Source: Podarcis pityusensis (taxonomy: Eukaryota). From it: a stretch of DNA of 64,000 nt. The number at the start of each line of letters is the position of its first letter. Within the stretch, counting starts at the first letter, position 1. The position numbers were made by a program, and so were the translations under genes. This document shows, in pieces, positions 18,539-61,530 of the stretch. The stretch lies in assembly GCA_964106645.2 (NCBI GenBank), contig OZ067038.1; one strand, given 5' to 3'. A model generated the notes under the pieces. It saw only the letters and a program-made list of their open reading frames with translations. It made no database searches and was not told the origin of the DNA.

Positions 18539-18621
18539 CTTTTTTTTAACTTCAGTGTGGAATGTGTTGTTTTTACTCTACACATTAATTGTAATGTCTC
18601 AGCTGAATTTTAAATGTTTAG

Positions 18622-27395: not shown

Positions 27396-29237
27396 GTATG
27401 TGGCTAGCTCTGATTCATTGTTTCATATTAATATCAGGTTGCTATTAAGGAGACAACAAACGAGGCTGCATTTTACTGAAAGAGCTAGGACTGTTTTTTA
27501 CAGGGCACTGGTTATTGCAAAATACTGTGTTAAAAGTTATCAACGCAGATATCGTTTGTCATTACCAAGAAGCACTAAATTTCATTAAGTGGAAGAAAGA
27601 CTATGTATGTAATGCAGCGCTGAAATTCCTGGCTCAATAAGCCATGATAGGCATGAGCTGCATCTACCTGCCTCTCCCCCCCTCCCTTTCACATGAGTTG
27701 CAAAGCAAACAAGTATGTAGCTTCCCATGATGTGCAATTTGGGAACTATGGTTAAGGTCAAACAAATCAAGGTTAGGCACTAGCTTTGAACCAGAGTTTA
27801 AAGGTGATGTATGAATCCCGACTTGTTTGCAGCCACTTAGGACTCAGCTTACAAGTCATGCAAGGCTGTGCTTAAGAGCTAAATCCTCTCTTTCTTTCTT
27901 ACTCATGCAACCAGAGTAGCAAAGGCAGATGCACTCTGCTAGTGTATATATTAGCTTATTAAGGCAGGGCTCTGCTTGTCCAGAGCAAGTGACCATTGAC
28001 CCCCCCCCCAGGCTATTGCCAGAGTTCCCCAACAGCCAGTTGGGAGGCTTCCAGCACAACGCTGTGAAATGTGCACTATTTCTCTCTTTAAGAAGCCATC
28101 TGAGTCTGCAAAAGTACTGTGAATTAAACCGGGTACATGTCAGTGATGCGACAGCAGCATATGCAGTTCAGTTCTCATTCTCCTGCCTAGTCTCATTGCC
28201 AAGAAGTCTCAGTTCTTGGCTGGGAAAAGGTTCTAGGTGGTAGTAATGGGAGAGAAGAAGAGCTTCATGGAGAAATAGAGGGAAATATGTAGGTGCTCTG
28301 TGTTCATGTGCAGCTTTGAATCTTATCTGTTGTATGTAGACATTGTTGCATAATTTTTCTGTGATCATCAACCCTGATCATCAAGGGGCTGAATAGTGCA
28401 ATGGCTTTTTGATTACCTAAAATAGTTTCCTTTGAATCAAATTTCGAATGTCCAGTTTGTAGGATCAAAGTCTCGGTATCCATGCTCACTTAGGCTGCAA
28501 ACCTATACCCATTTTCCTTGTCCTTGGTAGGGCTTGCTTTCAAGTAGAATTACAGTGTTAGTCTCTCACTACTTGATGAATCACTTGATAATGAAAAGTC
28601 AAATGTGTGGACTGTCTATAGTGATTTGGTTTGTATTGAATACGGATGATGCAGGTAAATAGTAGTGAGATGCATTAGTTAATTGATGATGACTCAAAGA
28701 TGTGTGAGTCCTCACTTGATTCTGGAATCATTGAGAGAACTGTGATGGGTAGTCCAGTGAAAGACTTTCTTTCCTGTAAGACTAGTGTTGGATTGGAAAT
28801 ACATTATACATATTAACACTACTTGAGTTGGGCCACAGCTAGGAATTATGATATTTATTAATTTTTGAAAAAATAGATGATTTCAAAGGTAAAAACCTGG
28901 AATTTGTTAGTTAAATTTGAAAACCATGAGACTTGAGGTGTAGGGTAAGTGTGAAACTATTGAGCTGGTCTTTCTCCATTTGTCTTCTGATCTTGGTGCA
29001 GTTTGTGTTCTCAGTTTTGTCTCCTCAGCTAAGTAAGGTTAGAAATATTTATATTTAGAGTTTCTTTGTATTATTATCTGTTTTCCAAGTGCTTTGGCTT
29101 TCAGAAATGTGTTTAGCAGGCCACAACAGGTCCACAAATTATGCTTATCCATGGTGTATACAACAATGAAACTTGCTTCTACACTTCCCCTGTTTAGTTT
29201 TTAAACTCAAGTGTTTTATATTTTAACATTTTCTTAG

Positions 29238-29328
29238 GGGCTGTTTTCTTACCTCATCACTGATAGGCACACTTGCTCTGAGCCTTACAATACCTCTGTC
29301 CATAATAGCCGATATGTGCATGCAAAAG
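29238..29328 (+). CDS. SLC35F5: SLC35F5 coding exon 11
   Basis: (W)[30 protein letters not shown]; 91 nt. Confidence 0.95.
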
Positions 29329-30052
29329 GTAATGTATTTTATTATTTTTATTATTATTAATGACAATTGTAAGAACTGCCCTGGTTAGGACTCTTAGCAA
29401 TGTCACATGACTAGGGAGAATTAAAATAGCTGTGGTAGGGAGAAATAAATTGTACTTAATTGCAAGTGACTACTTTTGCTTCTCCAGCAATATCATTTAA
29501 TGTTCACTTCCTTAAATGCATCCTTCTCTTTTTATAAGGTGAAATAAGTAGGTGGCTTTTTTAAAAAAAATGGAGGGGGGGGAATGTAATGGGCACGATC
29601 CTTGCAAGCTCACTGATTACACAGGGCATAACAGAGGCCTGTTCCTTCCTTCCCCACCTATCTAGACACATAGAAGTGCCACCAGGGCAATCCAGGACAT
29701 GAGATGTCTGTGCATGCCTCTCATTGTCCTCCAAGCTCATATTTCTTGACAGAGCAAGGGCTGCACGAGAATGCGGGAGGCACACATGGGCCACCCATTT
29801 TCCAGGTTTCTGGGTGCCTGCGTTTGCAGAGCAGGGAAATGGAGCTCTATTGTCTCTTTCTAAGCCTCTCTGCACAAGGCCACGGAAGCTGCTTGGTCAC
29901 TGAACCAGTGATTAAGCTTTTGAGTCTTTATATACCTTCTACAAATAAAAGACGTTTCCTAACTTGCTAGAAGTCTGTATTATGGGAATTAGATCCTGAT
30001 TAGGCGGGTAGAAGGTCTGTATAATTTTGTATGGGTTTAGAAGCCTCAAAGG

Positions 30053-30188
30053 CAGGCATAGGCAAACTCGGCCCTCCAGATGTTTTGGGACTACAACTCC
30101 CATCATCCCTAGCTAACAGGACCAGTGGTCAGGGATGATGGGAGTTGTAGTCCCAAAACATCTGGAGGGCCGGGTTTGCCTATGTCTG
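30053..30188. mobile_element. Palindromic hAT-type MITE
   Basis: Near-perfect hairpin CAGGCATAGGCAAAC...GTTTGCCTATGTCTG; exact 8-bp TSD CTCAAAGG; same core as 25983 copy. Confidence 0.9.
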
Positions 30189-31564
30189 CTCAAAGGTCTC
30201 CAAAGGTTTGACTTGTAATGAAAACCCAAGAATGTTGGTGGTTCTAGTTAGAATACCAGGAGTTAAAAGTGCATTAAGAGTTCTTTAAATGGGAGTAAAT
30301 AGAGCATGACGTTGGACTGTTATGTCCGCATTGCAACATGTCTCCATCATGGTCAAACTATCATGTTATTGCAGAGGATTTAGGCATGCTTGCTCTTGTA
30401 GTTGCCAATGAAAGCCTTGCTGGAAACATGCTTTGACTTTATCCTTCATTGCTGAACAGAATAAGAAATGGTGCTATAGTAGTTAGGGGTATTTGTCCAT
30501 GAACAATAAGTTGAGTTAAGTTACCAGCTGTCAGAAATAAGATTACTTTTAGATACAGTTCAGGTTTAATTCTACAGCAGGAAGGATTTTATTGAATTCA
30601 GGTAGTTGTTACTGTTTTTCAAGTAGAGGTGCAGAGATCCTATAGGAACATGGGTATTTTGACAAATGAAAATACTCTATCAGTATGTCAGGGACGCAGC
30701 AGGAAAACTGTTTAAGTAGATGGCATGAGAAATACCTAAATTACTTGATGAATGAAGCATACGGCAGGTTGCATTTTAGCCTGTCACAGTGGAAGTGTTG
30801 TCTCGTTTTCATATTCATTTTTAATGCTGGTAGAATTTGCCCTCGTTGTGACACTTTCATTCTAAAGTGAGACATTTCCAATATAGTGTGAGATTAGCAT
30901 TTGATGCAGCTACTAGTCTCAGCTGCTAACAATGGCTTTGGATTGATGTCCAAATAACTTGCACAATTCAGACCCACAAATTAAATAATTCACGCTTCTT
31001 TCTGCTGTATCCAATGCTGAAATGCTTCTGATCCCTAGTATACAATGTTTCTTCCTTTGTTTTTTACCTTTCCCCCTACCCACTGGCTTTCAGGTCCATG
31101 AACTACAAAACAGGTTTTCCCACTTATGGCTCTGTGGAGCTAGGTGGCAGTAGCAAAGTCTTGGCATTGCACGATGTACCTAGCAAGAAGGAAGCAGCAA
31201 CAAAGAAAGATGGATGCCTGGGTGGAAAATTGGCACAAAACTCTTTCTTCTTCACAGTGGCTGTGTTTGGACGTATTAATGAAATTCAGTTTATTGTTCC
31301 AGGAATGAGCTGCAGCAAGCTTAAGGCTTGCACACTCTTTCTTCTCTGCTCCAGCAGGTAGAGGAGATTGAATCTGGCTTGATTCAACAACCATAGTTGA
31401 AATTAACTGAAGTTTAACTTTGGTTAATCAAAACTGGAAGCAAAAGCTTCCAATCTTCTCGTGGCTGATTTGGGGGCAGTTCCTGGTCCAGCTGCAGCTC
31501 CCCATGACACAATCCAAGCTCTTGAAACGGGGCCCATGTGCTTCAGTTGAGACATTTGGAGGGC

Positions 31565-31910
31565 TCTAAACCACTGAGCCTCTTGGGCTTGCCGATCAGA
31601 AGGTCAGCGGTTCGAATCCCATCAACGGGGTGAGCTCCTGTTGCTCAGTCCCAGCTCCTGCCAACCTAGCAGTTCGAAAGCACTCCAAAGTACAAGTAGA
31701 TAAATAGGTACCGCTCTGGCAGGAAGGTAAACAGCGTTTCCATGCACTCTGGTTTTGGTGTTCCGGTGTGCTAGAAGCAGTTAGTCATGCTGGCCACATG
31801 ACCTGGAAAACTGTCTGTGGACAAATGCTGGCTCCCTCGGCCTGTAAAGCAAGATGAGCACCGCAACCCTAGAGTTGTTTGCGACTGGACAGGGGTCCTT
31901 TACCTTTACT
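31565..31910 (+). mobile_element. Sauria SINE, near full length
   Basis: B box GGTTCGAATCC at ~31609, conserved core, GGGGTCCTTTACCTTTAC tail. Confidence 0.88.
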
Positions 31911-32322
31911 TTTTAGAAGAGAAGTAAGAAAACTAGTTGTGTGAAACAGCCTTTCAACCTTTTGGGATGCAACCAATTTTTTTTAAAAAAATTGATGAGT
32001 CCAACTTTTAATCAAATATGTGTAAAAATTAGTTGATTGCAACACTTGGGCTTCTGATTTTGTAAACTGGGTAACTTCATTTACTTGCATATAAATAGTG
32101 TATGTGATAACATTGGCAGCCGTTCCAAATAAAGTGCCAATATGAGATGGATATTCCTATTACTGTGTTTTAAAACCTTACACAGATCTACTCCATCTAG
32201 GAAAATGTTTTCCAAGATTTCTGTAATGACCAAATACCTTCTTCCTTTACTCCACTTTTACTATTGGTGGAATAGCAAATTGATATTTTAAAAGCAAAAT
32301 GCTATCCTTGTTCTAATTTCAG

Positions 32323-32477
32323 GTCCAATTTTCTTGGTTATTTTTTGCCGGGGCAATCCCTGTATTCTTTTCATTTTTCATTGCAACTCTCTTATGTCAC
32401 TACAACAACTGGGATCCAGTGATGGTGGGAATTAGAAGAGTTTTTGTATTCATTTGCAGAAAACACCGTATTCAGAG
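32323..32477 (+). CDS. SLC35F5: SLC35F5 coding exon 12
   Basis: [51 protein letters not shown]+AG; 155 nt. Confidence 0.95.
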
Positions 32478-33269
32478 GTGGGATCATTTCTTTACAGCTT
32501 TATCTCTTTCCATTCCTACTGGACTTATTTTGATGCATATCTTTATTATTCCTTTGTTTTGCCACTGTTGATGGGGGGGGGGGGCAGATGAAAAGGCGGT
32601 TAGGGCACCTGCACTTTTAATAGTTATACAGTACGGAGAATATAAACAAATATATCTTGCATGAGTTGAAATTCCCCCTTCTACACAGCTATGTAAGGGG
32701 CATGAAACTTCATCTACACAACTTTGATTAGTTTGCATGATCTGGTTTCAACTGTCTGAAATATGTTCTCATTGGACATTGTTCTAAATTCTTAAATTAT
32801 GAATCTCTTATTACAGCATACTTTTCTCAACAGTATTCTAGTTTGGGAAAACATTATTCCACTGACAGTCTTTGAATTGCTCATTTTACAGATAATCAAG
32901 GCACAAATAATTCTTAACATAAAACTTAGCAAGGACATTGAGGAAAACTATGTATATAAAAAAAGTACAAATCATTTATATTTTTTACAAAGTAACCCCT
33001 GACAAATAAACAACTATGAAAATGATCTGATAATTAAGCTGTTCTTTTTTTTTATAAACATACTTTTCCTTAGTACACATTTTAGTTATCAATTTAATTT
33101 TAGAGCCAACAAACGTGGAGTGAAGAATGTAAAACAAGATGCTGTGCGTGACAATTTCTCATCGAAGTCAAGATATTTTCCCTATCAGGACTAGCATTAT
33201 AGATGTGCCTGTCTGTTTTTCATAATGCTGCGTATAAATACAAATTTCACAATCTGTATCATTTTGTAG

Positions 33270-33354
33270 AACATCTGACGAAAGTGAGCAATGTGAAAGT
33301 CTCATTGCCATGCACAGTGTTTCGCAAGAAGATGGAGAAAATGGCTGTTCTTAG
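33270..33354 (+). CDS. SLC35F5: SLC35F5 coding exon 13 (stop TAG 33352-33354; exon continues to donor at 33361)
   Basis: (R)TSDESEQCESLIAMHSVSQEDGENGCS*; total protein ~481 aa. Confidence 0.93.
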
Positions 33355-34030
33355 ACAACAGGTATGCACAATTATAAAAAAAGTTGTGGGTTACATCTAA
33401 GTTATAAAAAAGAACCTATTACATTATCAACATGAAACAGTTCCCATCTCCTTACTTTTGGAATGTTAATAATAAGCACAGATGTTATAGAGCCAGTTAT
33501 GTATGCCAATTGATGACAACAATTGCAGCAGCACAACTTCAGAGAATCTGTGAGCATCAGTTTTAATAGTGGTTTAACTTGTAAAGTTTCTAATGTTACA
33601 TTGTTTGTTTTATTTAGTATAAAAATGTTTATCATTTAATATTTTTTAAAAAATCTTATTAAGTGGTGTGCAGTCTAAAAAGCATACAAAAATCATGAAA
33701 ACATGAAAACAAAATTATGTATGTGATTTAATAATTTGAAAACCATGAGAAAAGACTTAATAATCACAGGTACTTCATAATGACACTGCCAGATATGCTT
33801 GTCCAGGTGTAAGTGCATGAATGTAATTTAAAATATATTTATTTCCCAATAATCCTTCTGCTTCTTCCTTTATGTGCTAAAATGCTGAACAGGCTGCTAT
33901 GTAGTCAGATCCTTAGGTTTATTTAATCTATAGCAGCATGATTAGTTAATGCAGGTTATAAAGTCCAGTCAAATAAATGCAGAATGTTGTATATAATAAA
34001 CTAATAATACTTTCCCCATTTCTTCAATAG

Positions 34031-37770: not shown

Positions 37771-39702
37771 TATCTGGAATTCTTAAATCACCTCTGGATC
37801 CAAGCCAATATTCTCAAGACAAACTTAGTTCCCAGTGCCTCTGTGTGGGACATAGGGACAGAGTTGCCTCGTTTTTTAATTATTTAGCTTGTACACTGAA
37901 GTAAAGTAACTTTGTGAAATGTCACATAGTCATATAGTGACTTAAAATGTTTTTATTTGCCAACTTTTTAAATTAAAGCCCATCTCAAGTACATATTTAA
38001 TATTGGCCTTTCCCCCAAGTTAAAACAGATCACACCAAAATGCAAAATTAAAAGTAGACAGTGTCAAATTGGAGATGCAGAGAATTAGATACGGGGCCTT
38101 TCTGTATAATGAACAAATGACCCTGCTGCTTCTGAAACCTGTGCTTATCCTATCTCTACCCCAAGAGCAGTAATTTGGTTCGGAGTATGTCTGTTTATTA
38201 CAAATATTTTAATATCTCCCTTTGATCATATTCCCAGAGTGTTTACATGTTGATGTTGACTGGATATCTGATAATGAACCCCGTCCCTTGATTATTTACT
38301 CATTTCCCGTGATTCCTATGAAAAACCTTCCTAGTCAGCCATTTCATCTATATTGTTTCCTTGTTTCCTTTCTGCTTTGTTTTATTCATGATTTTGTTAC
38401 CCCTGGAGAGGGTCCCTGGGATATGACCTTGGTAACAAACCATGCCTCTGCCTCTGGGTTTGCATTTCTGATTAAGGTGGTTGGCTTCCCCCAAGGCCAG
38501 AACTTTGGAAGGTGTTGCAAATTAACATTAGTAACAGCGCCTGAGACAAAAACGAAAGCTTAACTGTAGGTGGAGATCTGTTTGCGGAGAGATTTGGAAG
38601 ATAACATATTTAGAAGGAACATCTGTCACCTGCATTTTCTAGGGAATATGAATAGCTTATACTAGTCTTTAGCTTTGTGCATTTTTAAAAATGGCATAGA
38701 GCTAAAGAAAATAGTAGGTGCTATGTAGAGGAGAGGGAGGGGAAATTCCACTGAACAGGTACAACTCATTGCACTAGCGGAACAGTTTAGTTGGATACCA
38801 GCTATAATCTGGGGGGAAACAGCTCTGTTCCCCTATGCTCAAGAGTTTCATGCAGGGGAAATGTGGCTGGAATAAACGTAGTGTTACCTCTTGAAATGCC
38901 CTGTTTTGGAGAGTGATGTGTTTGTATGCTGTTTGGCAGTGTACATCATAATCGGATCACAACCACCTTGAATAGTGGATTTCTTTGTCTACCTAGGCAC
39001 TTGAAGTCTGCATATTGGTATGTGTGAATAGACTTATTGTTGAGAAAAGATTTGGTAAATCCTTTTCAGTGGAAAGTTGCTATGAGCCACTGCTCAGGGG
39101 ATATTCAAGACAGCAAACCTAAAGCTGTAACACTTTAAATTGTAGAGATAATGAGATGAGAAAGAGAGAGAGAGTCTAATGTTGCACAGATTAATTTTTT
39201 TGGCTTGAACAATGTACATATTTCTTTTTAATGAATGAACAATAAGAGTGATCTCAAATCTATACAGCAGTTCTTGTGCACATTTATGGACCTGAGCAAT
39301 TACTTGTTTTCACTGCCTACCGTGATGGATACATAAACATTTCTAAATAGGAGCAGTGTGCCAAATGTGTACATTAGAGCTGAGAAATAAAAATTGAAAA
39401 CTAGGACACACAACTTAATGGCCAGATCCTGTACTTGTTGCATTCTTTTGGAGTCAACTCATTACAAAAATATTACAATAACATTTTTTTATTGATTACC
39501 CCCCCCCCCCAATCTGGCTGAGTTGCCCCAGCCACTCTGGGTGGCTTCCAACACACATAAAAATAATAATAAAACATCAAACAATCCAATCCAATATGGA
39601 AGTCAAAATAACTTTAAAATAAACAACTTATATCAAAGCAATATTCAATAATCCATTAGAATCCAATAGTAAACAGTAAAATTAAACATCAGCAAATAAT
39701 AA

Positions 39703-40083
39703 CTGTCGAAGAATTGATGCTTTTGAATTATGGTGCTGGAGGAGACTCTTGAGAGTCCCATGGACTGCAAAAAGATCAAACCTATCCATTCTGAAGGAAA
39801 TCAGCCCTGAGTGCTCACTGGAAGGACAGATCGTGAAGCTGAGGCTCCAATACTTTGGCCACCTCATGAGAAGAGAAGACTTCCCGGAAAAGACCCTGAT
39901 GTTGGGAAAGATGGAGGGCGCAAGGAGAAGGGGACGACAGAGGACGAGATGGTTGGACAGTGTTCTCGAAGCTACCAGCACGAGTTTGACCAAACTGTGG
40001 GAGGCAGTGGAAGACAGGAGTGCCTGGTGTGCTCTGGTCCATGGGGTCACGAAGAGTCGGACACAACTAAACAACAACAACAA
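39703..40083 (+). mobile_element. BovB (RTE-clade LINE) 3' fragment
   Basis: RRIDAFELWCWRRLLRVPWTAKRSNLSILKEISPECSLEGQIVKLRLQYFGHLMRRED...VHGVTKSRT, (CAA)n tail, candidate TSD CAAATAATAA (39693-39702 / 40084-40093). Confidence 0.9.
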
Positions 40084-40459
40084 CAAATAATAATAATTAA
40101 AAAGTTTACACTTATCAGTTAGAATAAAGAATTACTAATCAATAATAAAAATAACAGCAAATCACAATGCATAAAATACCACAAAACATACAAAATCATG
40201 TAAAAGAGTCACGTTGCGAAACAAGAACACACAAACTGTAAAATTATTATTTTTAAGTATCCCTGAACTCCTCCCTTCCGAGCTGCTTCTGCTCTTCTCA
40301 AAGTCATGGTCTGGGAAAGGCTCCCAGGGCTGGAGGGTGGGGCAAGACAGGTGGAAAAGCCATTGCCTACAGAAAGTCTCCCTCCCCTCAGTTCTTATAA
40401 AGATGTCTGAAAATGAAACGTAAAGGCTGGCAACATCAGCCCCACCAATGTGGAAATGC

Positions 40460-43176: not shown

Positions 43177-43432
43177 CAGCGGCGGCCTCTGAGGAGTCTG
43201 CCTGCCTCCTCCCACTCGGCTACCCTACAGCTGAGGGGGAGGCAACGCGCGGACTGTTTGGGGCAGCGCGGAGCCTGTGGGCGCTCAAGCCACTGCGTTA
43301 CTCCCAGGAGAGACACGTGGCTCAGGTGCGCTGCAGGCCCCGTGGTAAGTGCTGTCCACCATTTTGTCACTCCCCTCAGTGGGGACACCTGGGGCAGGCT
43401 GCACCTACAGCACCCCCATTGCTATGCCCCTG
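43177..43432 (-). mobile_element. Non-autonomous hAT element
   Basis: Exact 8-bp TSD ACTACAGA (43169-43176, 43433-43440); interior is the reverse complement of 61166-61530. Confidence 0.8.
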
Positions 43433-43766
43433 ACTACAGATTGTAGTCTCCTTTGCTTCACCCAGCGGCATAGGAGGCCGATGATTGATCACACGGCAAT
43501 TATACCTTATCCTTCAGCACTTCACAGCTGCTGCCAGCGGGTTGTGCCCCACTCTGCCTAAAGCTAAGGCTCTCCTTACACAAGTACCTGAAGGAGCACC
43601 TACTCTCATTTCAATGTGCCCATCAGCTAAGATCATCTCCAAGTGCTTCCTCTAACAGAGGTGCAACAGATGTCAACTGCTGGGTGACTCAATTAAGGAA
43701 AGTTGTGTCCAAGGAGGCTTGCCTGACCCAAACCACGGTGTCTTTTAGGCATCAGGCAGAATTTTT

Positions 43767-44214
43767 TCATGGAACTTTGAAGTGTCAGGCATAGCCCTAC
43801 TGGCTTTAGCCCAAACGTAGCAGAGTTTTCCTGCACAGCGAAGAAGCTAGTTGCGGCGGTAATGACTAGTCAGCTAGACTCAGAATAACTATTTACAGGA
43901 TTTATTAAAAGGAAAAATAAAACCAGCAGAGTTTCTGCATACAAAACAAAGCAAATAAATCCTTTCTTTCTCTCTCTCTCTCATAACCATACACAGCACT
44001 TCGAACTCCTTCTCCTAACACACCTCACACCAAACTGTGCTAGCATTCCCAGATAACAGAGTTGAGTGCTGGTCGTTAACCAATCAGAGTAAGTAGTTTC
44101 TAGGCCAAGCAGACCTGGGCTTTCTGCCAAGAGTAAATTGACACTGCCTTGAGTTAATTGTGTGAAGCCAGAATCTGCAAGTTCCCATGAGAATCAATTA
44201 ACAGAAACTGAACA
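43767..44214 (-). repeat. Copia 3' LTR
   Basis: Direct repeat of 48489-48936; AATAAA on element strand at 43901-43906; preceded on element strand by PPT GAGGGGG (44215-44221). Confidence 0.95.
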
Positions 44215-44268
44215 CCCCCTCACAGATTCTGCTGGACAATTAACATCAAAAAACACCTATGTAGGAGA

Positions 44269-47200
44269 TTATTTTTCCAGCAAACCTAAACCCTTGCACA
44301 TTTGCTTGTTCTTTATCTTTGCCAATGGTTTAGTTAATACATCTGCTACATTTTCTTCACTTGATACATAAGTACATGTGATTATATTGTCTTGTACACA
44401 GCAACGTACATTTTGGTATTTTACAGAGATATGTTTGGAACGTGATTTGAAACCTTCTGTTTTACTTAAGGTTATACAAGCTTGATTATCAATGTAAACT
44501 CGTACTGGTTCTCCACAATTTACATTTAAATCTGCTAACAAATGCTTGAAATAAATCACCTCGTTGCACAATTCACTCAATGCGGCGTACTCCGATTCCG
44601 TTGATGACACACTTACAACGTCTTGCTTGCGTGACCGCCAGCTGATTAAAGCTCCACCGACCATTATGACTAGTCCTGTGACAGATTTTCTATCTGGCAA
44701 ATTTCCCCAGTCACTATCACAGTAGCAACTCAACATTTCGTCCTCAGAAGAATTTAATTGTAACATATAGCCAATTGTCTGTTTGAGGTATCTCAGAACT
44801 TGTTTTACCCCTTTCCAGGCATTTAGTGTGGGTTTTGAGACCAATCTACTTAATATGCCTACTGCGTAGCTAATATCAGGTCTGGACCACTGTGCTAGAT
44901 ACAATAAACTTCCAATTACAGAATGATATACATCAGGATGTTCAAATTCAGGACTCTCATCTATATGAAGTGTTTTTATGAAACCTGGATCCATAGGCAC
45001 CACTGCCCCTTTGCAATCCTGCATCCTGTATGTAGTCAGTAGTTGTTTAACTTTGTTCTGCTGACTAATTAGGCAGCTGCCATCTTGGGCCCAGCACACT
45101 TCCAACCCTAGATATGTCCTAACCGGGCCTAAGTCTTTCACTTTGAACTTACTGGACAATTGCTTGGCAAACCTTTTAGTTTGTTTATCTGTTTTGCAGG
45201 CATACAATACATCATCTACATAAATCAGACAAAACTCTTGATCACTGCCTGTACCACGTACATAAACACAATTGTCAGCTGTACTCTGCTTGAAACCAAA
45301 TGACACTAAGGCCTCATGGAAACATTTGTTCCAAGATCTTGCAGCCTGTTTGAGACCATATAGAGCTTTGTTTAATTTTAACACTCTATTGGAACCTGTC
45401 TCATAACCAGGCGGTTCGGCTAGATACAGGTCTTCTGATATTGATGCATGTAAATATGCAGTCTGGATATCAAAATGGTTTAACAGGAGTTTTCTCTTTG
45501 CTCCAAGCGTTAGAATCAGCCTTACACTGTCCCCCTTAGCAGTAGGGGAAAAAGTTTCGTCATAATCTTTTCCAGGCCTCTGAGAATATCCTTGAGCCAC
45601 TAAACGAGCTTTGTATTTGTACTTTCCTGTCACCAGAGGTTTAAGTTTGTACACCCACCTGCAGCCTACAATCTTTGCCCCCTCAGGCGCTGCTACTGGT
45701 GTAAAAACCTTGTGCTCATTCAGAGAGGACATCTCTTCCTCCATTGCCTGTTTCCAGAGCTCTGCCTCCTCTTTTGGTAACTTTAACACCTCCTGAAAAC
45801 TCTTGGGTTCTGCAATTACACTAAACACATTTGCAGTATCTGGAGAAAAACGCACCGGAGGCACTCCTTTGTTTTGTCTTTTAGATCTTCTGGGAGAAAA
45901 TTTTTCTTCTGACCCACTTTCCTCCTCAGAACTACGACCTCTCTTTTGTTGCTTAGCAACTGGTCTTTGGCTAATTCCACTTTCTTGAGAGCTCTTATCT
46001 GAACTTTCCTCCCCCTCAGACTCTGATTCTCTGTGTCTACCTTCAGAGTCAAGGAGCTCGTGGGAAGGTTCAAACCAAACCTCAGTATTGGCATGTAGTC
46101 TCTCCCAGCCACTATGTTCACAAAAACTGGCATTCCTGGAGATCACAATGCCATTTGTCCCTTCAGCAAAGCGGAAACCTTTTCCCAGCTCTTGGTAACC
46201 CACAAACACTAACTGTCTGGTCTTAGGATCACCCTTTTTCCTCATTTGTTTCGGAATTAACACCCAGGCTTTTGATCCAAACACATGCAAATGGTCAATT
46301 TTAGGTTTTTTCTGAAACAATTTAAAGTACGGGGTTGTACCTATTGTTTGATGAAAGAGCCTATTTTGGAGATAACACGCGGTGAGCATACTCTCCCCCC
46401 AATAAGACATGGGCAAATCAGCATCATCAAGCATGGCAAACATCATATCTTGTAATGATCTGTTTTTTCGCTCTGCAACGCCATTCTCCTCTGGGGAAAA
46501 AACGTTCGTTTTCCTATGCCCAATGCCACGCTTTTGTAACCAATCTCTAAAAGCATTTGACATAAATTCGCCACCTCTGTCCGTCTGAATCCTTCTGAGT
46601 TTAATGGACAGCAATCTTTCCACAGATGCCACCCAGCCTTTAAACTTAGTGAACACGTCACCCTTATTCTTCATGGGGAAAACCCAAGAGTAACGTGTGG
46701 CGTCATCCACAATTGTTAGTGAAAAACGCGCTCCACCCCTGCTTACAGCAAATGGACCAATTACGTCCATGTGAACCAGCTGTAGCGGTGACTCACTAAC
46801 TCTGTCACTTCTGGGGTAAGAGACTCTGTGTGTTTTAACCTTTTTACAGACATTACAATCAAGGTACTTGTTACAACTCTTTAAATTACCCCCATCAGCC
46901 AATTCAGACATTTTTAGTACACTCTTCCAGCAAGCATGCCCCATTTTCCTATGCAATAAGTGCACACAGTTGTCATGTATAGCTTTGTTATTCACTGCAG
47001 GCTGAGATTTACTGACTACTGCTGCAACTTGAGATCCTGCTTTAAGCCAAAACAAGCCTCCCTCTGACTTAGCAGTGCCTAAAATCTCACCAGCCTTCTT
47101 AATAATGCAACTGTCTCTTTCAAAATACACTTTAAACCCAGCTTTTAGCAAACAATCTACAGACATCAGATTGCTCCTTAATGACGGCACACAAAGTACA

Positions 47201-48231
47201 TTTTGCAGGCATTCACGAAGACAAGGAACAAAAACTGCACCCCCCGAAATCACTTCGGAAGTACTTCCGTCTGCTAGAGCCACCTGGCTGCGCTGTGCTG
47301 AGTTCCTGGAAACAAACAATTCATCTGAATTTACGATGTGCCGAGACGCTCCCGAATCGACCACCCAGACAGCTTGTTTCTCATCAGCAATCTTGACCTC
47401 GGCGGTCACCAGCTGAGCCGACTGTTTTTGTTTGAAGAATTTCTTTTTACGCTGCTGCTGCTGCTGATCTCGTCTCTGCTCCTGCACCGGCAACTGAGAC
47501 TTGACCAACTCCGGACATTGTCGTTTTAGATGCGCTGAAGACCCACATCGGAAACAACGCCTAACAGCAAACGCTGACTCCTCACCAGTACACTGCTTTT
47601 GCTTCACCTCTGGCACGGCATGAGAACTCCTTCCAAACCGCCCGCCAGTAGAAGTCTCTGCAGCCAACGACCTTTCTTGCCTCTTCTGCCATTCTTCAAT
47701 CAAACGCCCAGTAACGTAACTGACTGATAAATCACGCTCCTGTATGCCTTCTAGAGACAAAACTAAATTATCCCAGCTTTCCGGGAGAGAACTCAAAATA
47801 ATAGCCACCTTCTCCTGCTGGTCTAACGCACAGTCTCTTTCCTGTAGCGCAGCGAACTTTAACTGTAAACTGTGTAGGTGTTCCTGCATTGTAACCCCAG
47901 GCTGTAACATTGCCTTGTACAATGCCTTACGAATGAACAGCTTGGAAACCGCTGTCTCACGCACATGGAGTTCTTTAAGTGCTTGCCACACACCTCTAGC
48001 TGTCTTGATTCCCCTCACATACGGCAACTGGGAATCTTCCAGCCCCAAGACAATTGTGGCCCTTGCTCTTTGGTCTTTATCGAGGTCTTCATCATCAGGC
48101 TTCGCAGGAAACTTACTCACCACTTGCCAGAGACGATCCCTCTGCAGCACTGCCTGCATGCGTTCCGACCACAGCAAGTAATTGGAGTCATTCAGACGCT
48201 CAAAAACCATCTGAACTGGTTGTGAGGCCAT
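44269..48231 (-). CDS. Copia gag-pol polyprotein (1320 aa)
   Basis: Zn knuckle CFRCGSSAHLKRQC; protease WVVDSGASRH; IN HRKMGH..CNVC, DVIGP, TDRGGEF, ENGVAERKNR; RT YKARLVAQG, DIQTAYL, LYGLKQA, YVDD; RNase H CDSDW, ESEY, DNQA, ADVLTK; IN precedes RT (copia order). Confidence 0.97.
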   Translation of the reverse strand: MASQPVQMVFERLNDSNYLLWSERMQAVLQRDRLWQVVSKFPAKPDDEDLDKDQRARATIVLGLEDSQLPYVRGIKTARGVWQALKELHVRETAVSKLFIRKALYKAMLQPGVTMQEHLHSLQLKFAALQERDCALDQQEKVAIILSSLPESWDNLVLSLEGIQERDLSVSYVTGRLIEEWQKRQERSLAAETSTGGRFGRSSHAVPEVKQKQCTGEESAFAVRRCFRCGSSAHLKRQCPELVKSQLPVQEQRRDQQQQQRKKKFFKQKQSAQLVTAEVKIADEKQAVWVVDSGASRHIVNSDELFVSRNSAQRSQVALADGSTSEVISGGAVFVPCLRECLQNVLCVPSLRSNLMSVDCLLKAGFKVYFERDSCIIKKAGEILGTAKSEGGLFWLKAGSQVAAVVSKSQPAVNNKAIHDNCVHLLHRKMGHACWKSVLKMSELADGGNLKSCNKYLDCNVCKKVKTHRVSYPRSDRVSESPLQLVHMDVIGPFAVSRGGARFSLTIVDDATRYSWVFPMKNKGDVFTKFKGWVASVERLLSIKLRRIQTDRGGEFMSNAFRDWLQKRGIGHRKTNVFSPEENGVAERKNRSLQDMMFAMLDDADLPMSYWGESMLTACYLQNRLFHQTIGTTPYFKLFQKKPKIDHLHVFGSKAWVLIPKQMRKKGDPKTRQLVFVGYQELGKGFRFAEGTNGIVISRNASFCEHSGWERLHANTEVWFEPSHELLDSEGRHRESESEGEESSDKSSQESGISQRPVAKQQKRGRSSEEESGSEEKFSPRRSKRQNKGVPPVRFSPDTANVFSVIAEPKSFQEVLKLPKEEAELWKQAMEEEMSSLNEHKVFTPVAAPEGAKIVGCRWVYKLKPLVTGKYKYKARLVAQGYSQRPGKDYDETFSPTAKGDSVRLILTLGAKRKLLLNHFDIQTAYLHASISEDLYLAEPPGYETGSNRVLKLNKALYGLKQAARSWNKCFHEALVSFGFKQSTADNCVYVRGTGSDQEFCLIYVDDVLYACKTDKQTKRFAKQLSSKFKVKDLGPVRTYLGLEVCWAQDGSCLISQQNKVKQLLTTYRMQDCKGAVVPMDPGFIKTLHIDESPEFEHPDVYHSVIGSLLYLAQWSRPDISYAVGILSRLVSKPTLNAWKGVKQVLRYLKQTIGYMLQLNSSEDEMLSCYCDSDWGNLPDRKSVTGLVIMVGGALISWRSRKQDVVSVSSTESEYAALSELCNEVIYFKHLLADLNVNCGEPVRVYIDNQACITLSKTEGFKSRSKHISVKYQNVRCCVQDNIITCTYVSSEENVADVLTKPLAKIKNKQMCKGLGLLEK

Positions 48232-48478
48232 CTTGAGAGCGATGTCCCTGGAACCCGGAACCAGCTACTCACAACCACCGAGAGAGAAAACAGGAACCAC
48301 AGCACCCAGCACTCACACGCTGCAGCTGTTGTCCTTGTGTCCACTGCGTCACCAGCTCACCACAGTCAGGAACCAGCCAGTGTCCATCTGCTGCACCAAC
48401 AGGAACAACAACTTCTGGAACTACTGGAACCAACACCGTTGATGCTGACACCACCACAACTCAGGCTGGCAGCACAAT

Positions 48479-48488
48479 GCCCATAACC
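48479..48488 (-). promoter_or_regulatory. Primer-binding site complementary to the anticodon arm of initiator tRNA-Met
   Basis: GGTTATGGGC immediately after the 5' LTR; same type as Drosophila copia and Ty5 half-tRNA priming. Confidence 0.85.
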
Positions 48489-48936
48489 TCATGGAACTTT
48501 GAAGTGTCAGGCATAGCCCTACTGGCTTTAGCCCAAACGTAGCAGAGTTTTCCTGCACAGCGAAGAAGCTAGTTGCGGCGGTAATGACTAGTCAGCTAGA
48601 CTCAGAATAACTATTTACAGGATTTATTAAAAGGAAAAATAAAACCAGCAGAGTTTCTGCATACAAAACAAAGCAAATAAATCCTTTCTTTCTCTCTCTC
48701 TCTCATAACCATACACAGCACTTCGAACTCCTTCTCCTAACACACCTCACACCAAACTGTGCTAGCATTCCCAGATAACAGAGTTGAGTGCTGGTCGTTA
48801 ACCAATCAGAGTAAGTAGTTTCTAGGCCAAGCAGACCTGGGCTTTCTGCCAAGAGTAAATTGACACTGCCTTGAGTTAATTGTGTGAAGCCAGAATCTGC
48901 AAGTTCCCATGAGAATCAATTAACAGAAACTGAACA
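48489..48936 (-). repeat. Copia 5' LTR
   Basis: No differences from the 3' LTR on visual comparison; termini TG...GA on element strand. Confidence 0.95.
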
Positions 48937-49000
48937 TTTTTATTATCCCAGGAAGTTTAAGTTATGTTCTTTAGGCTTCCTATTTTTTACTTATTATGAT

Positions 49001-49042
<42 letters not shown>

Positions 49043-49073
49043 CAGCAGCAGCAGTAGCAGCAGTAGCAGTAGT
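49001..49073. repeat. (AGT)n/(AGC)n microsatellite
   Basis: Direct reading. Confidence 0.9.
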
Positions 49074-49844
49074 GGCAGAAGTGTGTTGTATTTTAATGCT
49101 ATGCTTGTTCTTTTATATTGTTGTAAAACTGCAAGGGAATCCATTTTGATGAAGGGGGTTGGTATAGAAATATTTCAAGTGAAATTTTAAAATGTGGTTG
49201 CTATGGATTTTTTTATCATGGCAATGCTCCTATTTGTGTTTGGTTTTAGTATGTGTTAAATTTGATTGATTGTAAGCTTATATTGTTCAGTTTTATGCTT
49301 CATAAGCTGTCATGTGGGCCTTTTAACATCATGCTGGCAGGCTAGAAAACAAAACCTGACAATCTACATATGCCAAGGATATGTAAGTGTAAGTCTCACA
49401 ATTAATGTATGATTGATTACTCAACGTTTCCTCTTAATTTTGGTTATAATGTTTGTTATCTGAATTGGTTTCTTTAACATATGGGCTTGTGTGTATGTGG
49501 AATTTATGTGCTTAAAACACAGGACCAGTTCTAGATTTAATAGCTATTCCTTTTAGCATCTTTAATTTAATTTAGCATCTATAATTAATTTCCCAATTTG
49601 CTTTTATTGCTACCTGCTCCTTCTTTTGGGAAGCTATGAAAAATATTTCTAGTTGATTAGCTTGTCTTGAACTCCAGAGGCCACCTGTCAGCAGTAGGAG
49701 CTAATGGAAAAGGTACCAACACAAGCCAGACTGAATTCGCACTAAATTCAAAGCCAAAAAGGCAGAGACTTTAAATCCCTCATGTCTTTTCCCTCCCCGC
49801 ACCCCACTGCGCTTGTTTCACGGTAACTTAACTTTCTTTTGATT

Positions 49845-53610: not shown

Positions 53611-54026
53611 CAGTGGCGTAGGAAGGGGGGGCGGAGGGGGCAGGCTGCCCCAGGTGCCACTCTGGGAGGGGTGACAAGATGGCCCCTGCCTCCCCCCAGC
53701 TGTAGAGCAGCCGAGGGTGCCAGCAGTCCATATGGGCACTGCTCGCGCACCGTCTGTACGGGCTGCCGCTCTCACGCGCTGTCCTTACGGGCATCCATAT
53801 GGGCTGCTGCTCTTGCGCGTGGCGACTGAATGGGCTGCTGCACGTGCGCAGTCTGTATGGGATGCCTCTTGCACGGCAGCCTGTACGGTCGCTGTGCAAG
53901 CGGCATTCCGTATGGAGTGCACACGCACAGGGTGCCGCACATGCACAGCCCGTATGAGATGCTGCACATGCACAGTCCATACGGGCTATGCCGCCCCGGG
54001 TGCCGGAGAGGGTTCCTCCACCACTG
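53611..54026 (+). mobile_element. Non-autonomous hAT element with internal palindromic repeat array
   Basis: CAGTGGCGTAGG...CCTCCACCACTG; exact 8-bp TSD ACTACTGG (53603-53610, 54027-54034). Confidence 0.85.
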
Positions 54027-56277: not shown

Positions 56278-57824
56278 TTTTTTTTTTATAATGATATTTA
56301 TTAAAGTTTCACAAAAATACATAAAAATACAAAACAAAGAAAAAAGTATAAAGTTTTAAGATACAACAAAAAAGTAGAAAATTAGAAAAAGCGTACAAAA
56401 TAAAACAGTTAAGAACACAATAATATTCCATAACCTATCTTCCTTACTCTTATTTCCCCGGACCTCCTCATACCTCCCTTCTTTGTATTCCAATTCAATT
56501 TGTTGGTTCAGCAAATCCTTACCATTAGTCTTTTACCCAATTGTTAACCTTTTTTCCATGTCTCTTAAAGCATTACAGCCAAAAACCTCTTAGTTTCTAT
56601 CCAACATCCTTCTAAAGTTCCTTAATTTTGCAATATTTCTGTAAATAGTCCTTAAATTTCTTCCATTCTTCTTTCACCGACTCTTCTCCCTGGTCTCGGA
56701 TTCTGCCAGTCATTTCCGCCAATTCCATGTAGTCAATCACCTTCATCTGCCATTCTTCCAAAGTGGGTAGATCTTGTGTCTTCCAATACTTTGCGATAAG
56801 TATTCTTGCTGCTGTTGTAGCATACATAAAAAAGGTTCTGTCCTTCTTTGGCACCAGTTGGCCGACAATGCCCAAGAGAAAGGCCTCTGGTTTCTTCAGA
56901 AAGGTATATTTAAATACCTTTTTCAGTTCATTATATATCATTTCCCAGAAAGCCTTAATCTTTGGGCACGTCCACCAAAGGTGAAAGAATGTACCTTCAG
57001 TTTCTTTACATTTCCAACATTTATTATCGGGCAAATGAAAAATTTTTGCAAGCTTGACTGGGGTCATGTACCACCTGTATATCATTTTCATAATATTCTC
57101 TCTTAAGGCATTACATGCCGTAAACTTCATACCTGTGGTCCATAACTGTTCCCAGTTAGTGAACATAATATTATGTCCAACATCTTGTGCCCATTTAATC
57201 ATAGCAGATTTCACCGTTTCATCCTGAGTATTCCATTTCAACAGCAAGTTATACATTCTTGACAAATTTTTAGTTTTGGGTTCTAACAATTCTGTTTCTA
57301 ATTTTGACTTTTCCACTTGGAAGCCTATTTTCTTATCCAAATTATATGCCTCCATTATCTGATAGTAGTGGAGCCAGTCTCTTACTTTATTTTTTAATTT
57401 TTCAAAACTCTGCAATCTCAATTTATCTCCTTCTTGCTCCAAAATTTCCCAATATGTCGGCCATTTGGCCTCCATATTGAGCCTTTTCAGAGCTTTTGCT
57501 TCCATTGGTGACAGCCACCTTGGGGTTTTATTTTCCAATAAGTCTTTGTATCTTATCCAAACATTAAACAATGCTTTCCTAACAATATGGTTTTTGAATG
57601 CTTTGTGTGCTTTGACCTTATCATACCATAAATATGCATGCCATCCAAATACATTGTTAAAACCTTCTAGATCCAAAATGTCTGTGTTTTCAAGAAGTAG
57701 CCATTCTTTCAGCCAGCAAAAAGCTGCTGATTCATAATAAAGTTTAAGGTCTGGCAGGGCAAATCCACCTCTTTCCTTGGCATCAGTTAATATCTTAAAT
57801 TTTATTCTGGGCTTCTTGCCCTGC
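56278..57824 (-). mobile_element. 5'-truncated L1-clade LINE, recent insertion
   Basis: Poly(A) tail as T-run from 56278; exact 17-bp TSD TATAGCATGCTCATGTC (56261-56277, 57825-57841). Confidence 0.92.
56612..57823 (-). pseudogene. L1 ORF2 C-terminal part (uninterrupted but truncated; no RT core or endonuclease)
   Basis: QGKKPRIKFKILTDAKERGGFALPDLKLYY... and CCHC finger CWKCKETEGTFFHLWWTC. Confidence 0.9.
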
Positions 57825-60489: not shown

Positions 60490-61165
60490 TAAACCATCAC
60501 CCATTCCCTAAAGTGTAATGACATTGGCCATGTGGTTTTGGCTATTTAGAGTGGTGGTAGGTGGCAATAACCTCACTCTGAACAGGCTTTCAGTCACTGC
60601 CACATAAATTTGGCTATGTGTGAAGTCATATCTATTTTTATTTCTTTGTAATTTTTTTAACGGCTTAATATAATACAAATGCCCAAATGGTTTGTAAAGA
60701 AAACAATAAAGGTTAAAAACAATATCATTCAATACAATTTCTCATCCATATTGTGATATCATTACTTTCACTACATGATCCCTGGCTTGCTGAGATGATG
60801 TTCCCAGGAAAATGTTTTAAAGAAAAAAAATCACACGGAAGCAACTGATGAGCAGCCCTCAGAGAGTGAGCCACGTGGAGAGCTCAAAGAATGTTTTTGC
60901 TCTCCGACAGCACTATTTCCAAACAGAGCCAAGCATTCTACCTTACCCGCGGCTGCTTATTCATCTATTTGCTACCATTTGTACCTCATTTTTGCACCAA
61001 ACAGTGTTCCAGGTGACTAAATGCTGTAAAATATAAAGAAAAATAATCATTCAAAAGATAAAAGGCTGCTTGCTTTCCAAAATGCTTGTGGTGTCAGAAC
61101 AGTTACCCCATATCTTGCCAGGCTGGATATCTGTCTCAATCAGTTGCTATGCCACAAGCCAAAGC

Positions 61166-61530
61166 CAGGGGCGGAGGAAGGGAGTGCAGTGAGTGCGGTC
61201 TGCCCCAGGTGTCACCACTGAGGGGGTGACAAAATGTTGGGCGGCATTCACCATGGGGCCTGCAGTGCGCCCGAGCCATGTGTCTATCCTGGGAGAGACA
61301 TGGTGGCTTGGGCACGCACAGGCTCCACGCTGCCCAAACGGTCCGCCTGCTGCCCCCCCCCCCCCAGCTTTAGGGCAGCTGAGTGGAAGGAGGCAGGCAG
61401 ACTCCGGAGGCCCCACGGTGCACCCCGCCCCTATGGGGGGCTTGCCCTGCCCTCACCCCGCCCCTATGGGCAGTGCGCCCTGCCCCTGGGCATGCCGCCC
61501 CAGGCACCCGAGCGGCTTCCTCTGCCACTG
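61166..61530 (+). mobile_element. Non-autonomous hAT element
   Basis: CAGGGGCGGAGGAAG...CTTCCTCTGCCACTG; exact 8-bp TSD GCCAAAGC. Confidence 0.85.

What the first reader, a model, noticed from the sequence alone, without database searches (positions are those of the whole stretch)
43767..48936. Intact, very young Ty1/copia retrotransposon in an amniote genome
Seen: uninterrupted 1320-aa ORF with all catalytic motifs, two 448-bp LTRs with no differences I could find (including the CT microsatellite length), TSD, PBS and PPT. Known: copia elements are scarce in vertebrates and essentially unknown as intact elements in mammals and birds, although squamate copia sequences have been reported. Inference: a recently active, possibly still mobile family, and a candidate for horizontal acquisition from an invertebrate.
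Basis: partly seen in the sequence, partly recalled or inferred. Interest (0 to 1): 0.8.

Follow-up and report, generated by a model that had tools for sequence, protein, structure and literature searches.

The report
Young intact copia retrotransposon in lizard
This is a complete, very recently inserted copy of a Ty1/copia jumping gene in a Podarcis wall-lizard genome. It is still missing from the same site in related lizards. It is a good example of a kind already known to thrive in lizards and snakes, and nothing shows it came recently from an invertebrate.

Summary
Window 43767-48936 (minus strand) is a 5,170-bp Ty1/copia LTR retrotransposon. It has two 448-bp LTRs without a single difference, a 5-bp target duplication (TTTTT), a PBS and a PPT. 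One open 1,320-aa Gag-PR-IN-RT-RNaseH reading frame carries every catalytic motif.

Public reads strengthen "very young". Contigs of three DNA runs from three organism labels join the flanks exactly, without the element and with one TTTTT. The best-matching run looks heterozygous.

The host is a Podarcis wall lizard (Lacertidae, Squamata). The family has roughly tens of copies at 97-99% identity, in seven organism labels. These include other intact 1,320-aa ORFs and two full-length P. lilfordi copies. Differences between copies are mostly synonymous (dN/dS about 0.1), so the family has long been replicating.

The framing as rare in amniotes does not fit this host. Published surveys found Copia in 23 of 24 squamates, with record copy numbers. 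They also report 1,962 polymorphic Copia insertions in Anolis and expressed, expanding Copia in sea snakes.

Recent horizontal transfer is unsupported. Outside its own family, the closest protein among 1.8 billion representatives is 41% identical.

Verdict: real, probably still mobile, and a new member of a known kind.

The parts
43762..43766 (.). Target-site duplication, copy on the low-coordinate side (TTTTT)
   Evidence: The empty-site contigs keep one copy only.
43767..44214 (-). 3' LTR in element orientation, 448 bp. Termini TGTTCAG...CCATGA, a (GA)7 run, and AATAAA at LTR position 309.
44215..44223 (-). Polypurine tract GTGAGGGGG abutting the 3' LTR
   Evidence: Identical in four other copies of the family, L004-L007.
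44269..48231 (-). Single Gag-Pol ORF of 1,320 aa plus stop, with no frameshift or internal stop
47668..48195 (-). Gag capsid region (DUF4219 + Retrotran_gag_2, residues 13-188). The CCHC knuckle lies at 47515-47556.
   Evidence: Matches the Drosophila Copia VLP protein 8vvw at E=1e-17. Motif positions.
47134..47367 (-). Aspartic protease (Pol_BBD, residues 289-366; DSG at residue 292)
46105..46962 (-). Integrase: HHCC finger, DD35E core (rve, residues 481-577) and SH3-like domain (639-709)
   Evidence: Matches Ty1 integrase 7z0h at E=8e-14.
45832..46089 (-). Acidic, Ser-rich linker after the integrase, with two basic clusters (KQQKRGR and PRRSKRQNK). A nuclear localisation signal is inferred, not tested.
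   Evidence: sequence only
44992..45711 (-). Reverse transcriptase (RVT_2, residues 841-1080; YVDD at 1004)
44302..44739 (-). RNase H region (motif stretches at residues 1171-1301)
   Evidence: motifs read by eye; Pfam has no separate hit
48479..48488 (-). Primer-binding site GGTTATGGGC. It complements the anticodon arm of initiator tRNA-Met, i.e. copia-style half-tRNA priming.
   Evidence: Conserved in L004 and L005. It extends to 14 nt (GGTTATGGGCCCAG) in the P. lilfordi copies and is shared by the 41%-identical sister element L003. The tRNA sequence itself is recalled from memory.
48489..48936 (-). 5' LTR in element orientation, 448 bp, identical to the 3' LTR
48937..48941 (.). Target-site duplication, copy on the high-coordinate side (TTTTT)

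Best explanation
This is an autonomous Ty1/copia (Pseudoviridae-type) LTR retrotransposon in the genome of a Podarcis wall lizard. It lies on the minus strand, about 10 kb downstream of the last coding exon of a gene that looks like SLC35F5.

Inferred mechanism, from the family's known biology:
- Transcription starts in the 5' LTR and ends after the AATAAA in the 3' LTR.
- The single ORF is translated into a Gag-PR-IN-RT-RNaseH polyprotein, which the protease cuts.
- Gag builds a capsid.
- Reverse transcription is primed at the PBS by a fragment of initiator tRNA-Met, and plus-strand synthesis is primed at the PPT.
- Integrase inserts the DNA copy with a 5-bp staggered cut.

Shown here: this copy inserted so recently that its LTRs have not diverged, and the insertion is not fixed. 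The unoccupied site is present in three public DNA runs under three organism labels, and the best-matching run looks heterozygous. The copy belongs to a family of roughly tens of copies, shared by at least seven closely related organism labels. The family has several sub-lineages that keep the full ORF and differ mainly at synonymous sites. So it has been replicating in these lizards for millions of years and is probably still mobile.
For: Anatomy.

Host: the L1 ORF2 fragment at 56615-57823 is 92-93% identical to P. lilfordi proteins and 81-86% to the best full-coverage P. muralis ones.

Empty site: a joint 43760->48936 that skips 5,175 bases is seen in X1 (depth 14.9 against a flank depth of 19-27), X3 (13.2 against 14) and X14 (10.1 against 12.7). 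In X1 the flank contig stops exactly at 43766, and the joint contig has only 24 letters on its shorter side. I read that as the allele-specific arm of a heterozygous bubble.

Copy number: interior word depth is about 12-30 times the flank depth.

Family members:
- L004: 98.99% identical, intact 1,320-aa ORF, 29 synonymous to 12 non-synonymous differences.
- L005: 96.95% identical, intact 1,320-aa ORF, 52 synonymous to 23 non-synonymous.
- 35 differences from the dominant contigs: 26 synonymous to 9 non-synonymous, dN/dS about 0.09.
- P. lilfordi copies L006 and L007: full length, 98.3-98.4% identical, own 5-bp TSDs, LTR pairs with one mismatch each (L006 also one gap).

PBS: conserved across the family and in the sister element.

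Structure matches: Gag resembles the Drosophila copia capsid and IN resembles Ty1 integrase.
Against: - No direct proof of mobility or of full-length transcription. The one raw RNA run gave only 12 reads, all 95-99% alike and mostly in LTRs, from an organism that lacks this insertion.
- The runs labelled 'RNA?' that hold about half of the words are only guessed to be RNA.
- Organism names are coded, so 'seven taxa' may include subspecies or populations.
- Depth ratios from contig word depths are only a rough guide to copy number.
- Heterozygosity in X1 is inferred from unitig structure. The filled junction was not seen directly.
- LTR identity alone only bounds the age to under about 1.4-4.8 My at 95%, for assumed rates of 2.4e-9 down to 7e-10 per site per year.
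- The two P. lilfordi genomic copies have their ORF split into four or five open pieces. This may be real decay or assembly indel error.
Confidence: 0.9

Rival explanations
1. The family reached Podarcis recently by horizontal transfer from an invertebrate, such as a prey item or parasite. The intact young copy would belong to the first wave of amplification.
For: - The family sits on a long, isolated branch.
- A second Podarcis copia family groups with ant and pseudoscorpion sequences rather than with this one, so copia phylogeny does not track hosts at depth.
- Element CpG o/e is 0.45 against 0.26 in the flanks.
- The 2025 survey itself raises horizontal acquisition of the Mtanga clade by sarcopterygians as a hypothesis (PMC11889832).
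Against: - No protein outside the family exceeds 41-42% identity. This holds for 5.8 billion clusters (word search) and 1.84 billion representatives (exhaustive HMMER). Those collections do hold many arthropod copia and Podarcis TE ORFs (positive control).
- The only sister (L003, 41%) comes from a CpG-depleted contig (o/e 0.36), which hints at a vertebrate-like source genome but does not show it.
- Sub-lineages with intact ORFs differ by dS 0.035-0.064. That is roughly 7-32 My at host-like rates, an upper estimate.
- Contigs at 95-99% identity are as common as those at 99% or more.
- The family is shared by seven closely related organism labels.
- A higher CpG content is expected in any young copy.
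Confidence: 0.06
2. The identical LTRs and the open frame are an assembly or polishing artefact. A collapsed repeat, or a family consensus imposed on an older degraded copy, would look the same.
For: With tens of copies at about 99% identity, short-read polishing could homogenise a copy. The best run holds only 72% of the sampled words.
Against: - Independent runs show the precise empty site, with the TSD reduced to one copy.
- In X1 the flank contig ends exactly at the LTR boundary.
- This copy differs from the dominant family sequence at about 0.7-1.3% of sites, including LTR positions 44178, 44184, 48827 and 48839. It is therefore not simply the consensus.
- Two other full 1,320-aa ORFs exist independently.
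Confidence: 0.02
3. This is an old, fixed insertion whose LTRs were made identical by gene conversion, so the copy is not young.
For: LTR-LTR conversion is known in principle. LTR identity alone allows ages of up to a few million years.
Against: The unoccupied allele is present in three runs from three organism labels whose flanks differ from the window by only about 0.5%. The whole 3,963-bp ORF is open.
Confidence: 0.02

Closest known systems
Squamate Copia elements (reported as the Mtanga clade) surveyed in Mob DNA 2025 (PMC11889832)
   Same: Same host order. LTR-bounded elements with little damage, taken there as signs of recent activity. Copia was found in 23 of 24 squamates with record copy numbers, and only one clade is reported in Lepidosauria.
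   Different: This family's clade could not be assigned, because no Mtanga reference sequence was available. It is at most 42% identical in RT/RNaseH to everything retrievable, including a second Podarcis copia family. I found no paper in the searched library that describes copia in Podarcis.
Polymorphic Copia insertions in Anolis carolinensis (PMC7561263) and expressed, expanding Copia subfamilies in hydrophiine snakes (PMC8872380)
   Same: Non-fixed copia insertions and recently active subfamilies in a squamate. This is the same phenomenon as seen here.
   Different: Different host family (Lacertidae). Here a single insertion is resolved to the base, with its empty allele.
Drosophila copia (type element of the superfamily)
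   Same: Domain order Gag-PR-IN-RT-RH in one ORF and a 5-bp TSD. Gag matches the solved Copia VLP protein 8vvw at E=1e-17. The PBS complements an internal part (anticodon arm) of initiator tRNA-Met, which is the 'half-tRNA' priming described for copia (PMC5371799, PMC7773854).
   Different: It did not appear among the named best hits of the protein searches, so it is probably no closer than the listed 35-42% hits. No direct comparison was made. The 448-bp LTRs end TG...GA. The host is a vertebrate.
Yeast Ty1
   Same: Same superfamily. The integrase is homologous to the Ty1 integrase solved in the Pol III complex (7z0h, E=8e-14). 5-bp TSD.
   Different: From general knowledge, Ty1 makes Pol by a +1 frameshift, primes from the tRNA 3' end and targets Pol III genes. 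Here there is a single ORF, an internal-tRNA PBS, and no tRNA gene anywhere in the 64-kb window.
L003 / P0287, an unassigned copia on an ENA metagenome contig (ERZ27260066)
   Same: Sister to this family (SH-aLRT 100). Same domain set. Same PBS core GGTTATGGG directly after its LTR, and a CpG-depleted sequence.
   Different: Only 41% amino-acid identity. Its LTR ends in the canonical CA. The host is unknown.

Membership tests
Ty1/copia LTR retrotransposon (Pseudoviridae-type) | Pol domain order PR-IN-RT-RNaseH, with integrase upstream of RT | tested here: met
   Pfam: Pol_BBD 289-366, rve 481-577, RVT_2 841-1080. RNase H motifs lie at 1171-1301.
Ty1/copia LTR retrotransposon (Pseudoviridae-type) | Copia-type RT (RVT_2) and copia-type Gag | tested here: met
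   RVT_2 E=9e-68 and Retrotran_gag_2 E=3e-33. Gag matches the Drosophila Copia VLP protein 8vvw at E=1e-17.
Ty1/copia LTR retrotransposon (Pseudoviridae-type) | Direct LTRs flanked by a 5-bp target-site duplication | tested here: met
   448-bp LTRs, 100% identical, with TSD TTTTT. The empty site skips 5,170+5 bases. Other copies carry TSDs TAAAA and TTTCA.
Ty1/copia LTR retrotransposon (Pseudoviridae-type) | PBS complementary to tRNA-Met(i), and a PPT next to the 3' LTR | tested here: inconclusive
   GGTTATGGGC (14 nt, GGTTATGGGCCCAG, in L006 and L007) abuts the 5' LTR. It is conserved in five family copies and in the 41% sister element. The match to the tRNA-Met(i) anticodon arm rests on a tRNA sequence recalled from memory, because no tool-derived eukaryotic tRNA was available. 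The PPT GTGAGGGGG is conserved.
Ty1/copia LTR retrotransposon (Pseudoviridae-type) | No env-like additional ORF | tested here: met
   On the sense strand, the only other ORF of at least 100 aa (45816-46133, 105 aa) lies wholly inside the polyprotein frame. The other two short ORFs are antisense. Only 54 bases separate the stop codon from the 3' LTR.
Mtanga clade of Copia (the only clade reported in Lepidosauria) | RT/RNaseH clusters with the Anopheles gambiae Mtanga reference in a tree with the reference Copia clades | not testable with these tools
   No reference sequences of the named clades were retrievable. The paper's supplements are not held. The family falls in a supported group (SH-aLRT 94-97) that also holds Anopheles atroparvus, Solenopsis and Cordylochernes sequences, but inside an unresolved polytomy.
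Horizontally transferred TE (recent) | Sequence similarity between distant hosts far above that expected from host divergence | tested here: not met
   The best non-family protein is 41-42% identical. The positive control shows that Podarcis TE ORFs are in the collection.
Horizontally transferred TE (recent) | Patchy distribution: absent from close relatives of the host | tested here: inconclusive
   The family is present in seven closely related organism labels and in P. lilfordi. Other lacertid genera and other squamates could not be searched at the DNA level.
Currently active retrotransposon family | Intact coding capacity in more than one copy | tested here: met
   This copy, plus P0426/L004 and P0427/L005, each carry a full 1,320-aa ORF.
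Currently active retrotransposon family | Insertion polymorphism or unfixed copies | tested here: met
   Empty-site contigs in X1, X3 and X14. The X1 pattern fits a heterozygote.
Currently active retrotransposon family | Transcription of full-length sense RNA | tested here: inconclusive
   12 reads at 95-99% identity in 1.9 Gb of one RNA run. Several small runs guessed to be RNA hold about half of the words.

The most novel reading that the evidence does not exclude
This family and its only relative (the unassigned contig L003) may form a copia lineage outside the Mtanga clade. That would contradict the 2025 survey's finding that lepidosaurs carry Mtanga alone. It would also point to a separate, ancient horizontal entry into lacertids, with an element that is still transposing in the germline today, since the insertion looks heterozygous in the best-matching individual.
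Probability: 0.12. Interest if true: 0.5.

Novelty: new member of a known kind. Interest (0 to 1): 0.3.

Why it matters
Amniote genomes are usually thought of through mammals and birds, which have lost copia entirely. Squamates are the exception.

This locus gives a base-resolved example of an unfixed insertion from a copia family that keeps a complete, selectively maintained polyprotein in a well-studied lizard genus. It could serve as a marker for population studies in Podarcis. It is also an observational entry point for studying how an amniote germline controls copia elements, for example through piRNAs or methylation.

It does not change the current picture. Recent copia activity in squamates is already published, and the evidence does not support the horizontal-transfer idea that made the finding look exceptional.

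Tried and rejected
- Pfam scans of ten flanking ORFs and of six exon-like stretches gave nothing above threshold. The SLC35F5 assignment of the neighbouring gene therefore rests on my memory of the protein.
- Rfam (gathering thresholds) and ARAGORN found no RNA gene in the window. No tRNA gene is nearby as a possible Ty1-like target, and no tool-derived tRNA-Met(i) was available to test the PBS.
- The protein atlas search returned only generic RVT_2 clusters from plants, fungi and arthropods, which says nothing about phylogeny.
- Earlier scan notes near this place: none. A word search of the notes was blank.
- The supplements of the 2025 Copia survey are not held. I therefore could not check whether Podarcis was among its genomes, and no reference clade sequences could be used.
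- Llorens 2009 has no PBS or Mtanga text. Zhang 2020 has no mention of copia or squamates.
- No other copy, solo LTR or copia relic of this family exists elsewhere in the window.
- Assembly artefact and LTR gene conversion were considered and rejected; see the rival explanations.
The broken P. lilfordi copies are only described as having their ORF in four or five open pieces.
The window contains no N.
Full report
**Observation.** The interval 43767-48936 holds a 5,170-bp LTR retrotransposon on the minus strand.
- The only long ORF in the region is 48231..44269 (minus strand), 1,320 aa.
- Pfam finds DUF4219 and Retrotran_gag_2 (residues 13-188), the Pol beta-barrel protease (289-366), the integrase core (481-577), the retroviral SH3-like domain (639-709) and RVT_2 (841-1080, E=9e-68). 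Integrase lies before reverse transcriptase, which is the Ty1/copia order.
- The Gag CCHC knuckle, PR DSG, IN HHCC and DD35E, RT YVDD and the RNase H acidic motifs are all present.
- The two LTRs (43767-44214 and 48489-48936) are 448/448 identical, including the dinucleotide run. Identity stops exactly at both ends.
- TTTTT flanks both sides.
- In element orientation, the 5' LTR is followed at once by GGTTATGGGC, and the 3' LTR is preceded at once by GTGAGGGGG.
- The LTR carries an AATAAA at position 309 and no canonical TATA box. Its ends are TG...GA rather than TG...CA.
- There is no other copy, solo LTR or copia relic in the window.

**Is the insertion real and young?** I laid public reads and contigs on 43400-49300.
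- Three DNA runs from three organism labels each contain a contig that joins 43760 to 48936, skipping 5,175 bases. That equals the element plus one TSD copy, with six ambiguous letters (A + TTTTT). This is the unoccupied site, and it proves that the T-run is a true target duplication.
- In X3 and X14 the joint contig has the same depth as the flanks (13.2 against 14; 10.1 against 12.7). It runs through with 51 letters on its shorter side. These samples lack the insertion.
- In X1, the best holder, the flank contig (depth 25.5) stops exactly at 43766. The joint contig has depth 14.9 and only 24 letters on its shorter side. A 31-mer unitig graph would produce this for a heterozygote. That is my inference; the filled junction itself was not listed.
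- Zero differences in 2 x 448 bp only bounds the age to under about 1.4-4.8 My at 95%, for assumed rates of 2.4e-9 down to 7e-10 per site per year. The polymorphism is the stronger evidence for youth.
- The flanks of the three runs differ from the window by about 0.5%, so the labels are very close relatives.

**Host.** The flanks are CpG-depleted (o/e 0.26; element 0.45) at about 40% GC. An L1 ORF2 C-terminal fragment at 56615-57823 (minus) is 92-93% identical to proteins of Podarcis lilfordi and 81-86% identical to the best full-coverage Podarcis muralis proteins. Anolis, Salvator and Micrurus follow far behind. The window therefore comes from a Podarcis wall lizard (Lacertidae, Squamata); I did not determine the species. 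This search also served as a positive control, showing that the protein collection holds Podarcis TE-derived ORFs.

**The family.**
- Copy number: interior word depth is about 12-30 times the single-copy flank depth in the three runs. This suggests tens of copies, as a rough guide only.
- Spread: seven organism labels hold 45-72% of the sampled words.
- The 90% cluster of the RT region contains two annotated P. lilfordi fragments and two Logan contigs with complete 1,320-aa ORFs.
- L004 is 98.99% identical to this element, with 29 synonymous and 12 non-synonymous differences.
- L005 is 96.95% identical in the interior but only 88.5% in the LTR, with 52 synonymous and 23 non-synonymous differences.
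- Of 35 well-supported differences between this copy and the dominant family contigs, 26 are synonymous (dN/dS about 0.09).
- The sub-lineages therefore diverged while under selection for a working polyprotein, that is, while replicating. Their dS of 0.035-0.064 corresponds to roughly 7-32 My at host-like rates. This is an upper estimate, because reverse-transcription errors add to it.
- Two full-length genomic copies in the P. lilfordi assembly (L006 and L007) are 98.3-98.4% identical to this one. They have the same termini, their own 5-bp TSDs (TAAAA, TTTCA) and LTR pairs with one mismatch each (L006 also one gap). Their ORF is split into four or five open pieces, which may be decay or assembly indel error.

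**Priming.** The PBS core GGTTATGGG abuts the LTR in all five family copies examined. It extends to GGTTATGGGCCCAG in the P. lilfordi copies, and it is also present directly after the LTR of the 41%-identical sister element L003. From memory, this string is the complement of the anticodon arm of eukaryotic initiator tRNA-Met. That matches the 'half-tRNA' priming described for Drosophila copia (PMC5371799; PMC7773854, citing Kikuchi 1986). Conservation across 41% protein identity supports function. The tRNA identity itself could not be tested with a tool-derived sequence.

**Relatives and horizontal transfer.**
- Word-based searches with IN-RT-RH and with RT-RH alone found nothing between 42% and 99% identity.
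- An exhaustive HMMER scan of 1.84 billion representatives with residues 121-1320 gave the same result. The best non-family hit is P0287 at 41%.
- In trees the family is sister to P0287/L003 (SH-aLRT 100). L003 is an element on a metagenome contig of unknown host that is itself CpG-depleted (o/e 0.36).
- The pair sits in an unresolved polytomy within a supported group that also holds sequences from Anopheles atroparvus, Solenopsis invicta and Cordylochernes, plus a second Podarcis copia family (the P0041 cluster, which includes a P. lilfordi protein). That second family groups with the ant and pseudoscorpion sequences, not with this one.
- Copia phylogeny therefore does not follow hosts at depth, as already published. 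Nothing indicates a recent donor.
- Combined with the age structure inside the family, recent horizontal acquisition is unsupported. An ancient one cannot be addressed here.
- Membership in the Mtanga clade could not be tested, for lack of reference sequences.

**What is known.**
- Copia is absent from mammals and birds (PMC4350176), and also from turtles and crocodilians (PMC11889832).
- It was found in 23 of 24 squamates, which hold two thirds of all Copia copies detected in 263 metazoan genomes, all assigned to the Mtanga clade (PMC11889832).
- Anolis carolinensis has 1,962 polymorphic Copia insertions (PMC7561263).
- Hydrophiine snakes have expanding, expressed Copia subfamilies (PMC8872380).
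- I found no paper in the searched library on copia in Podarcis.
- The element is thus a new, well-resolved member of a known kind.

**Expression.** One raw RNA run of organism F gave 12 reads at 95-99% identity, mainly in LTRs and mostly with the first mate on the plus strand. Several small runs guessed to be RNA hold about half of the words. This is weak evidence that the family is transcribed, and it says nothing about this particular copy.

**Limits and compliance.**
- Organism names of the runs are coded.
- The neighbouring gene's exons were inspected one by one. The spliced model was neither joined nor searched.
- One experimental mobilisation step is referred rather than proposed.

Noticed in passing
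window 13446-33400, + strand (exon-like stretches in 13446-13901, 16404-16685, 21676-21999, 24824-25048, 27151-27585, 32317-32568, about 33283-33400); CpG-rich region 6000-7800: Open stretches read like consecutive exons of the solute carrier SLC35F5. I recognised this from memory of the human protein; Pfam gave nothing. The last one ends in a stop near 33.4 kb, so the copia insertion lies about 10 kb downstream of the coding region, on the opposite strand. The 55% GC block at 6-7.8 kb looks like the gene's CpG-island promoter.
   Followed up: partly
window 39686-40087, + strand: A 134-aa open stretch resembles the C-terminal end of the BovB/RTE LINE ORF (recognised from memory). Such elements are common in squamates.
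   Followed up: no
window 56615-57823, - strand: A 403-aa open fragment of an L1 ORF2 C-terminus with a Cys-rich motif. It is 92-93% identical to annotated P. lilfordi proteins and was used to identify the host genus.
   Followed up: yes
window 43193-43435, with an inverted copy at 61163-61405 (81%) and a short match at 53611-53682: An interspersed repeat of about 240 bp lies just upstream of the insertion site. It is GC-rich with long spurious open frames. Its family is unidentified.
   Followed up: no
L002 (Logan ERR14127509), protein P0041; the cluster includes P. lilfordi CAI5780544.1: A second, deeply divergent copia family of Podarcis. It is 38-42% identical to this one, has an intact 1,336-aa ORF in several runs and a CpG-depleted contig. 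In the tree it groups with ant and pseudoscorpion sequences rather than with the family studied here.
   Followed up: partly
L003 (ENA ERZ27260066, contig k141_173671), protein P0287: The only sister of the family (41% aa identity). It is a full copia with the same PBS core after its LTR. It sits on a CpG-depleted contig inside a metagenome assembly, so it may be host DNA of an unidentified animal.
   Followed up: partly
L006 7288-12465 and L007 7291-12465 (P. lilfordi GCA_947686815.1, OX395138.1 and OX395143.1): Two full-length copies have nearly identical LTR pairs, yet their polyprotein frame is split into four or five open pieces. Young LTRs with many frame breaks suggest assembly indel errors rather than decay. 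The annotation calls only the Gag part.
   Followed up: partly
window 45832-46089, - strand (residues 715-800): The linker between integrase and RT is acidic and serine-rich, with two basic clusters that look like a bipartite nuclear localisation signal. Other notes on this genome report acidic tethering-like motifs in gypsy integrase tails. No such motif was examined here.
   Followed up: no
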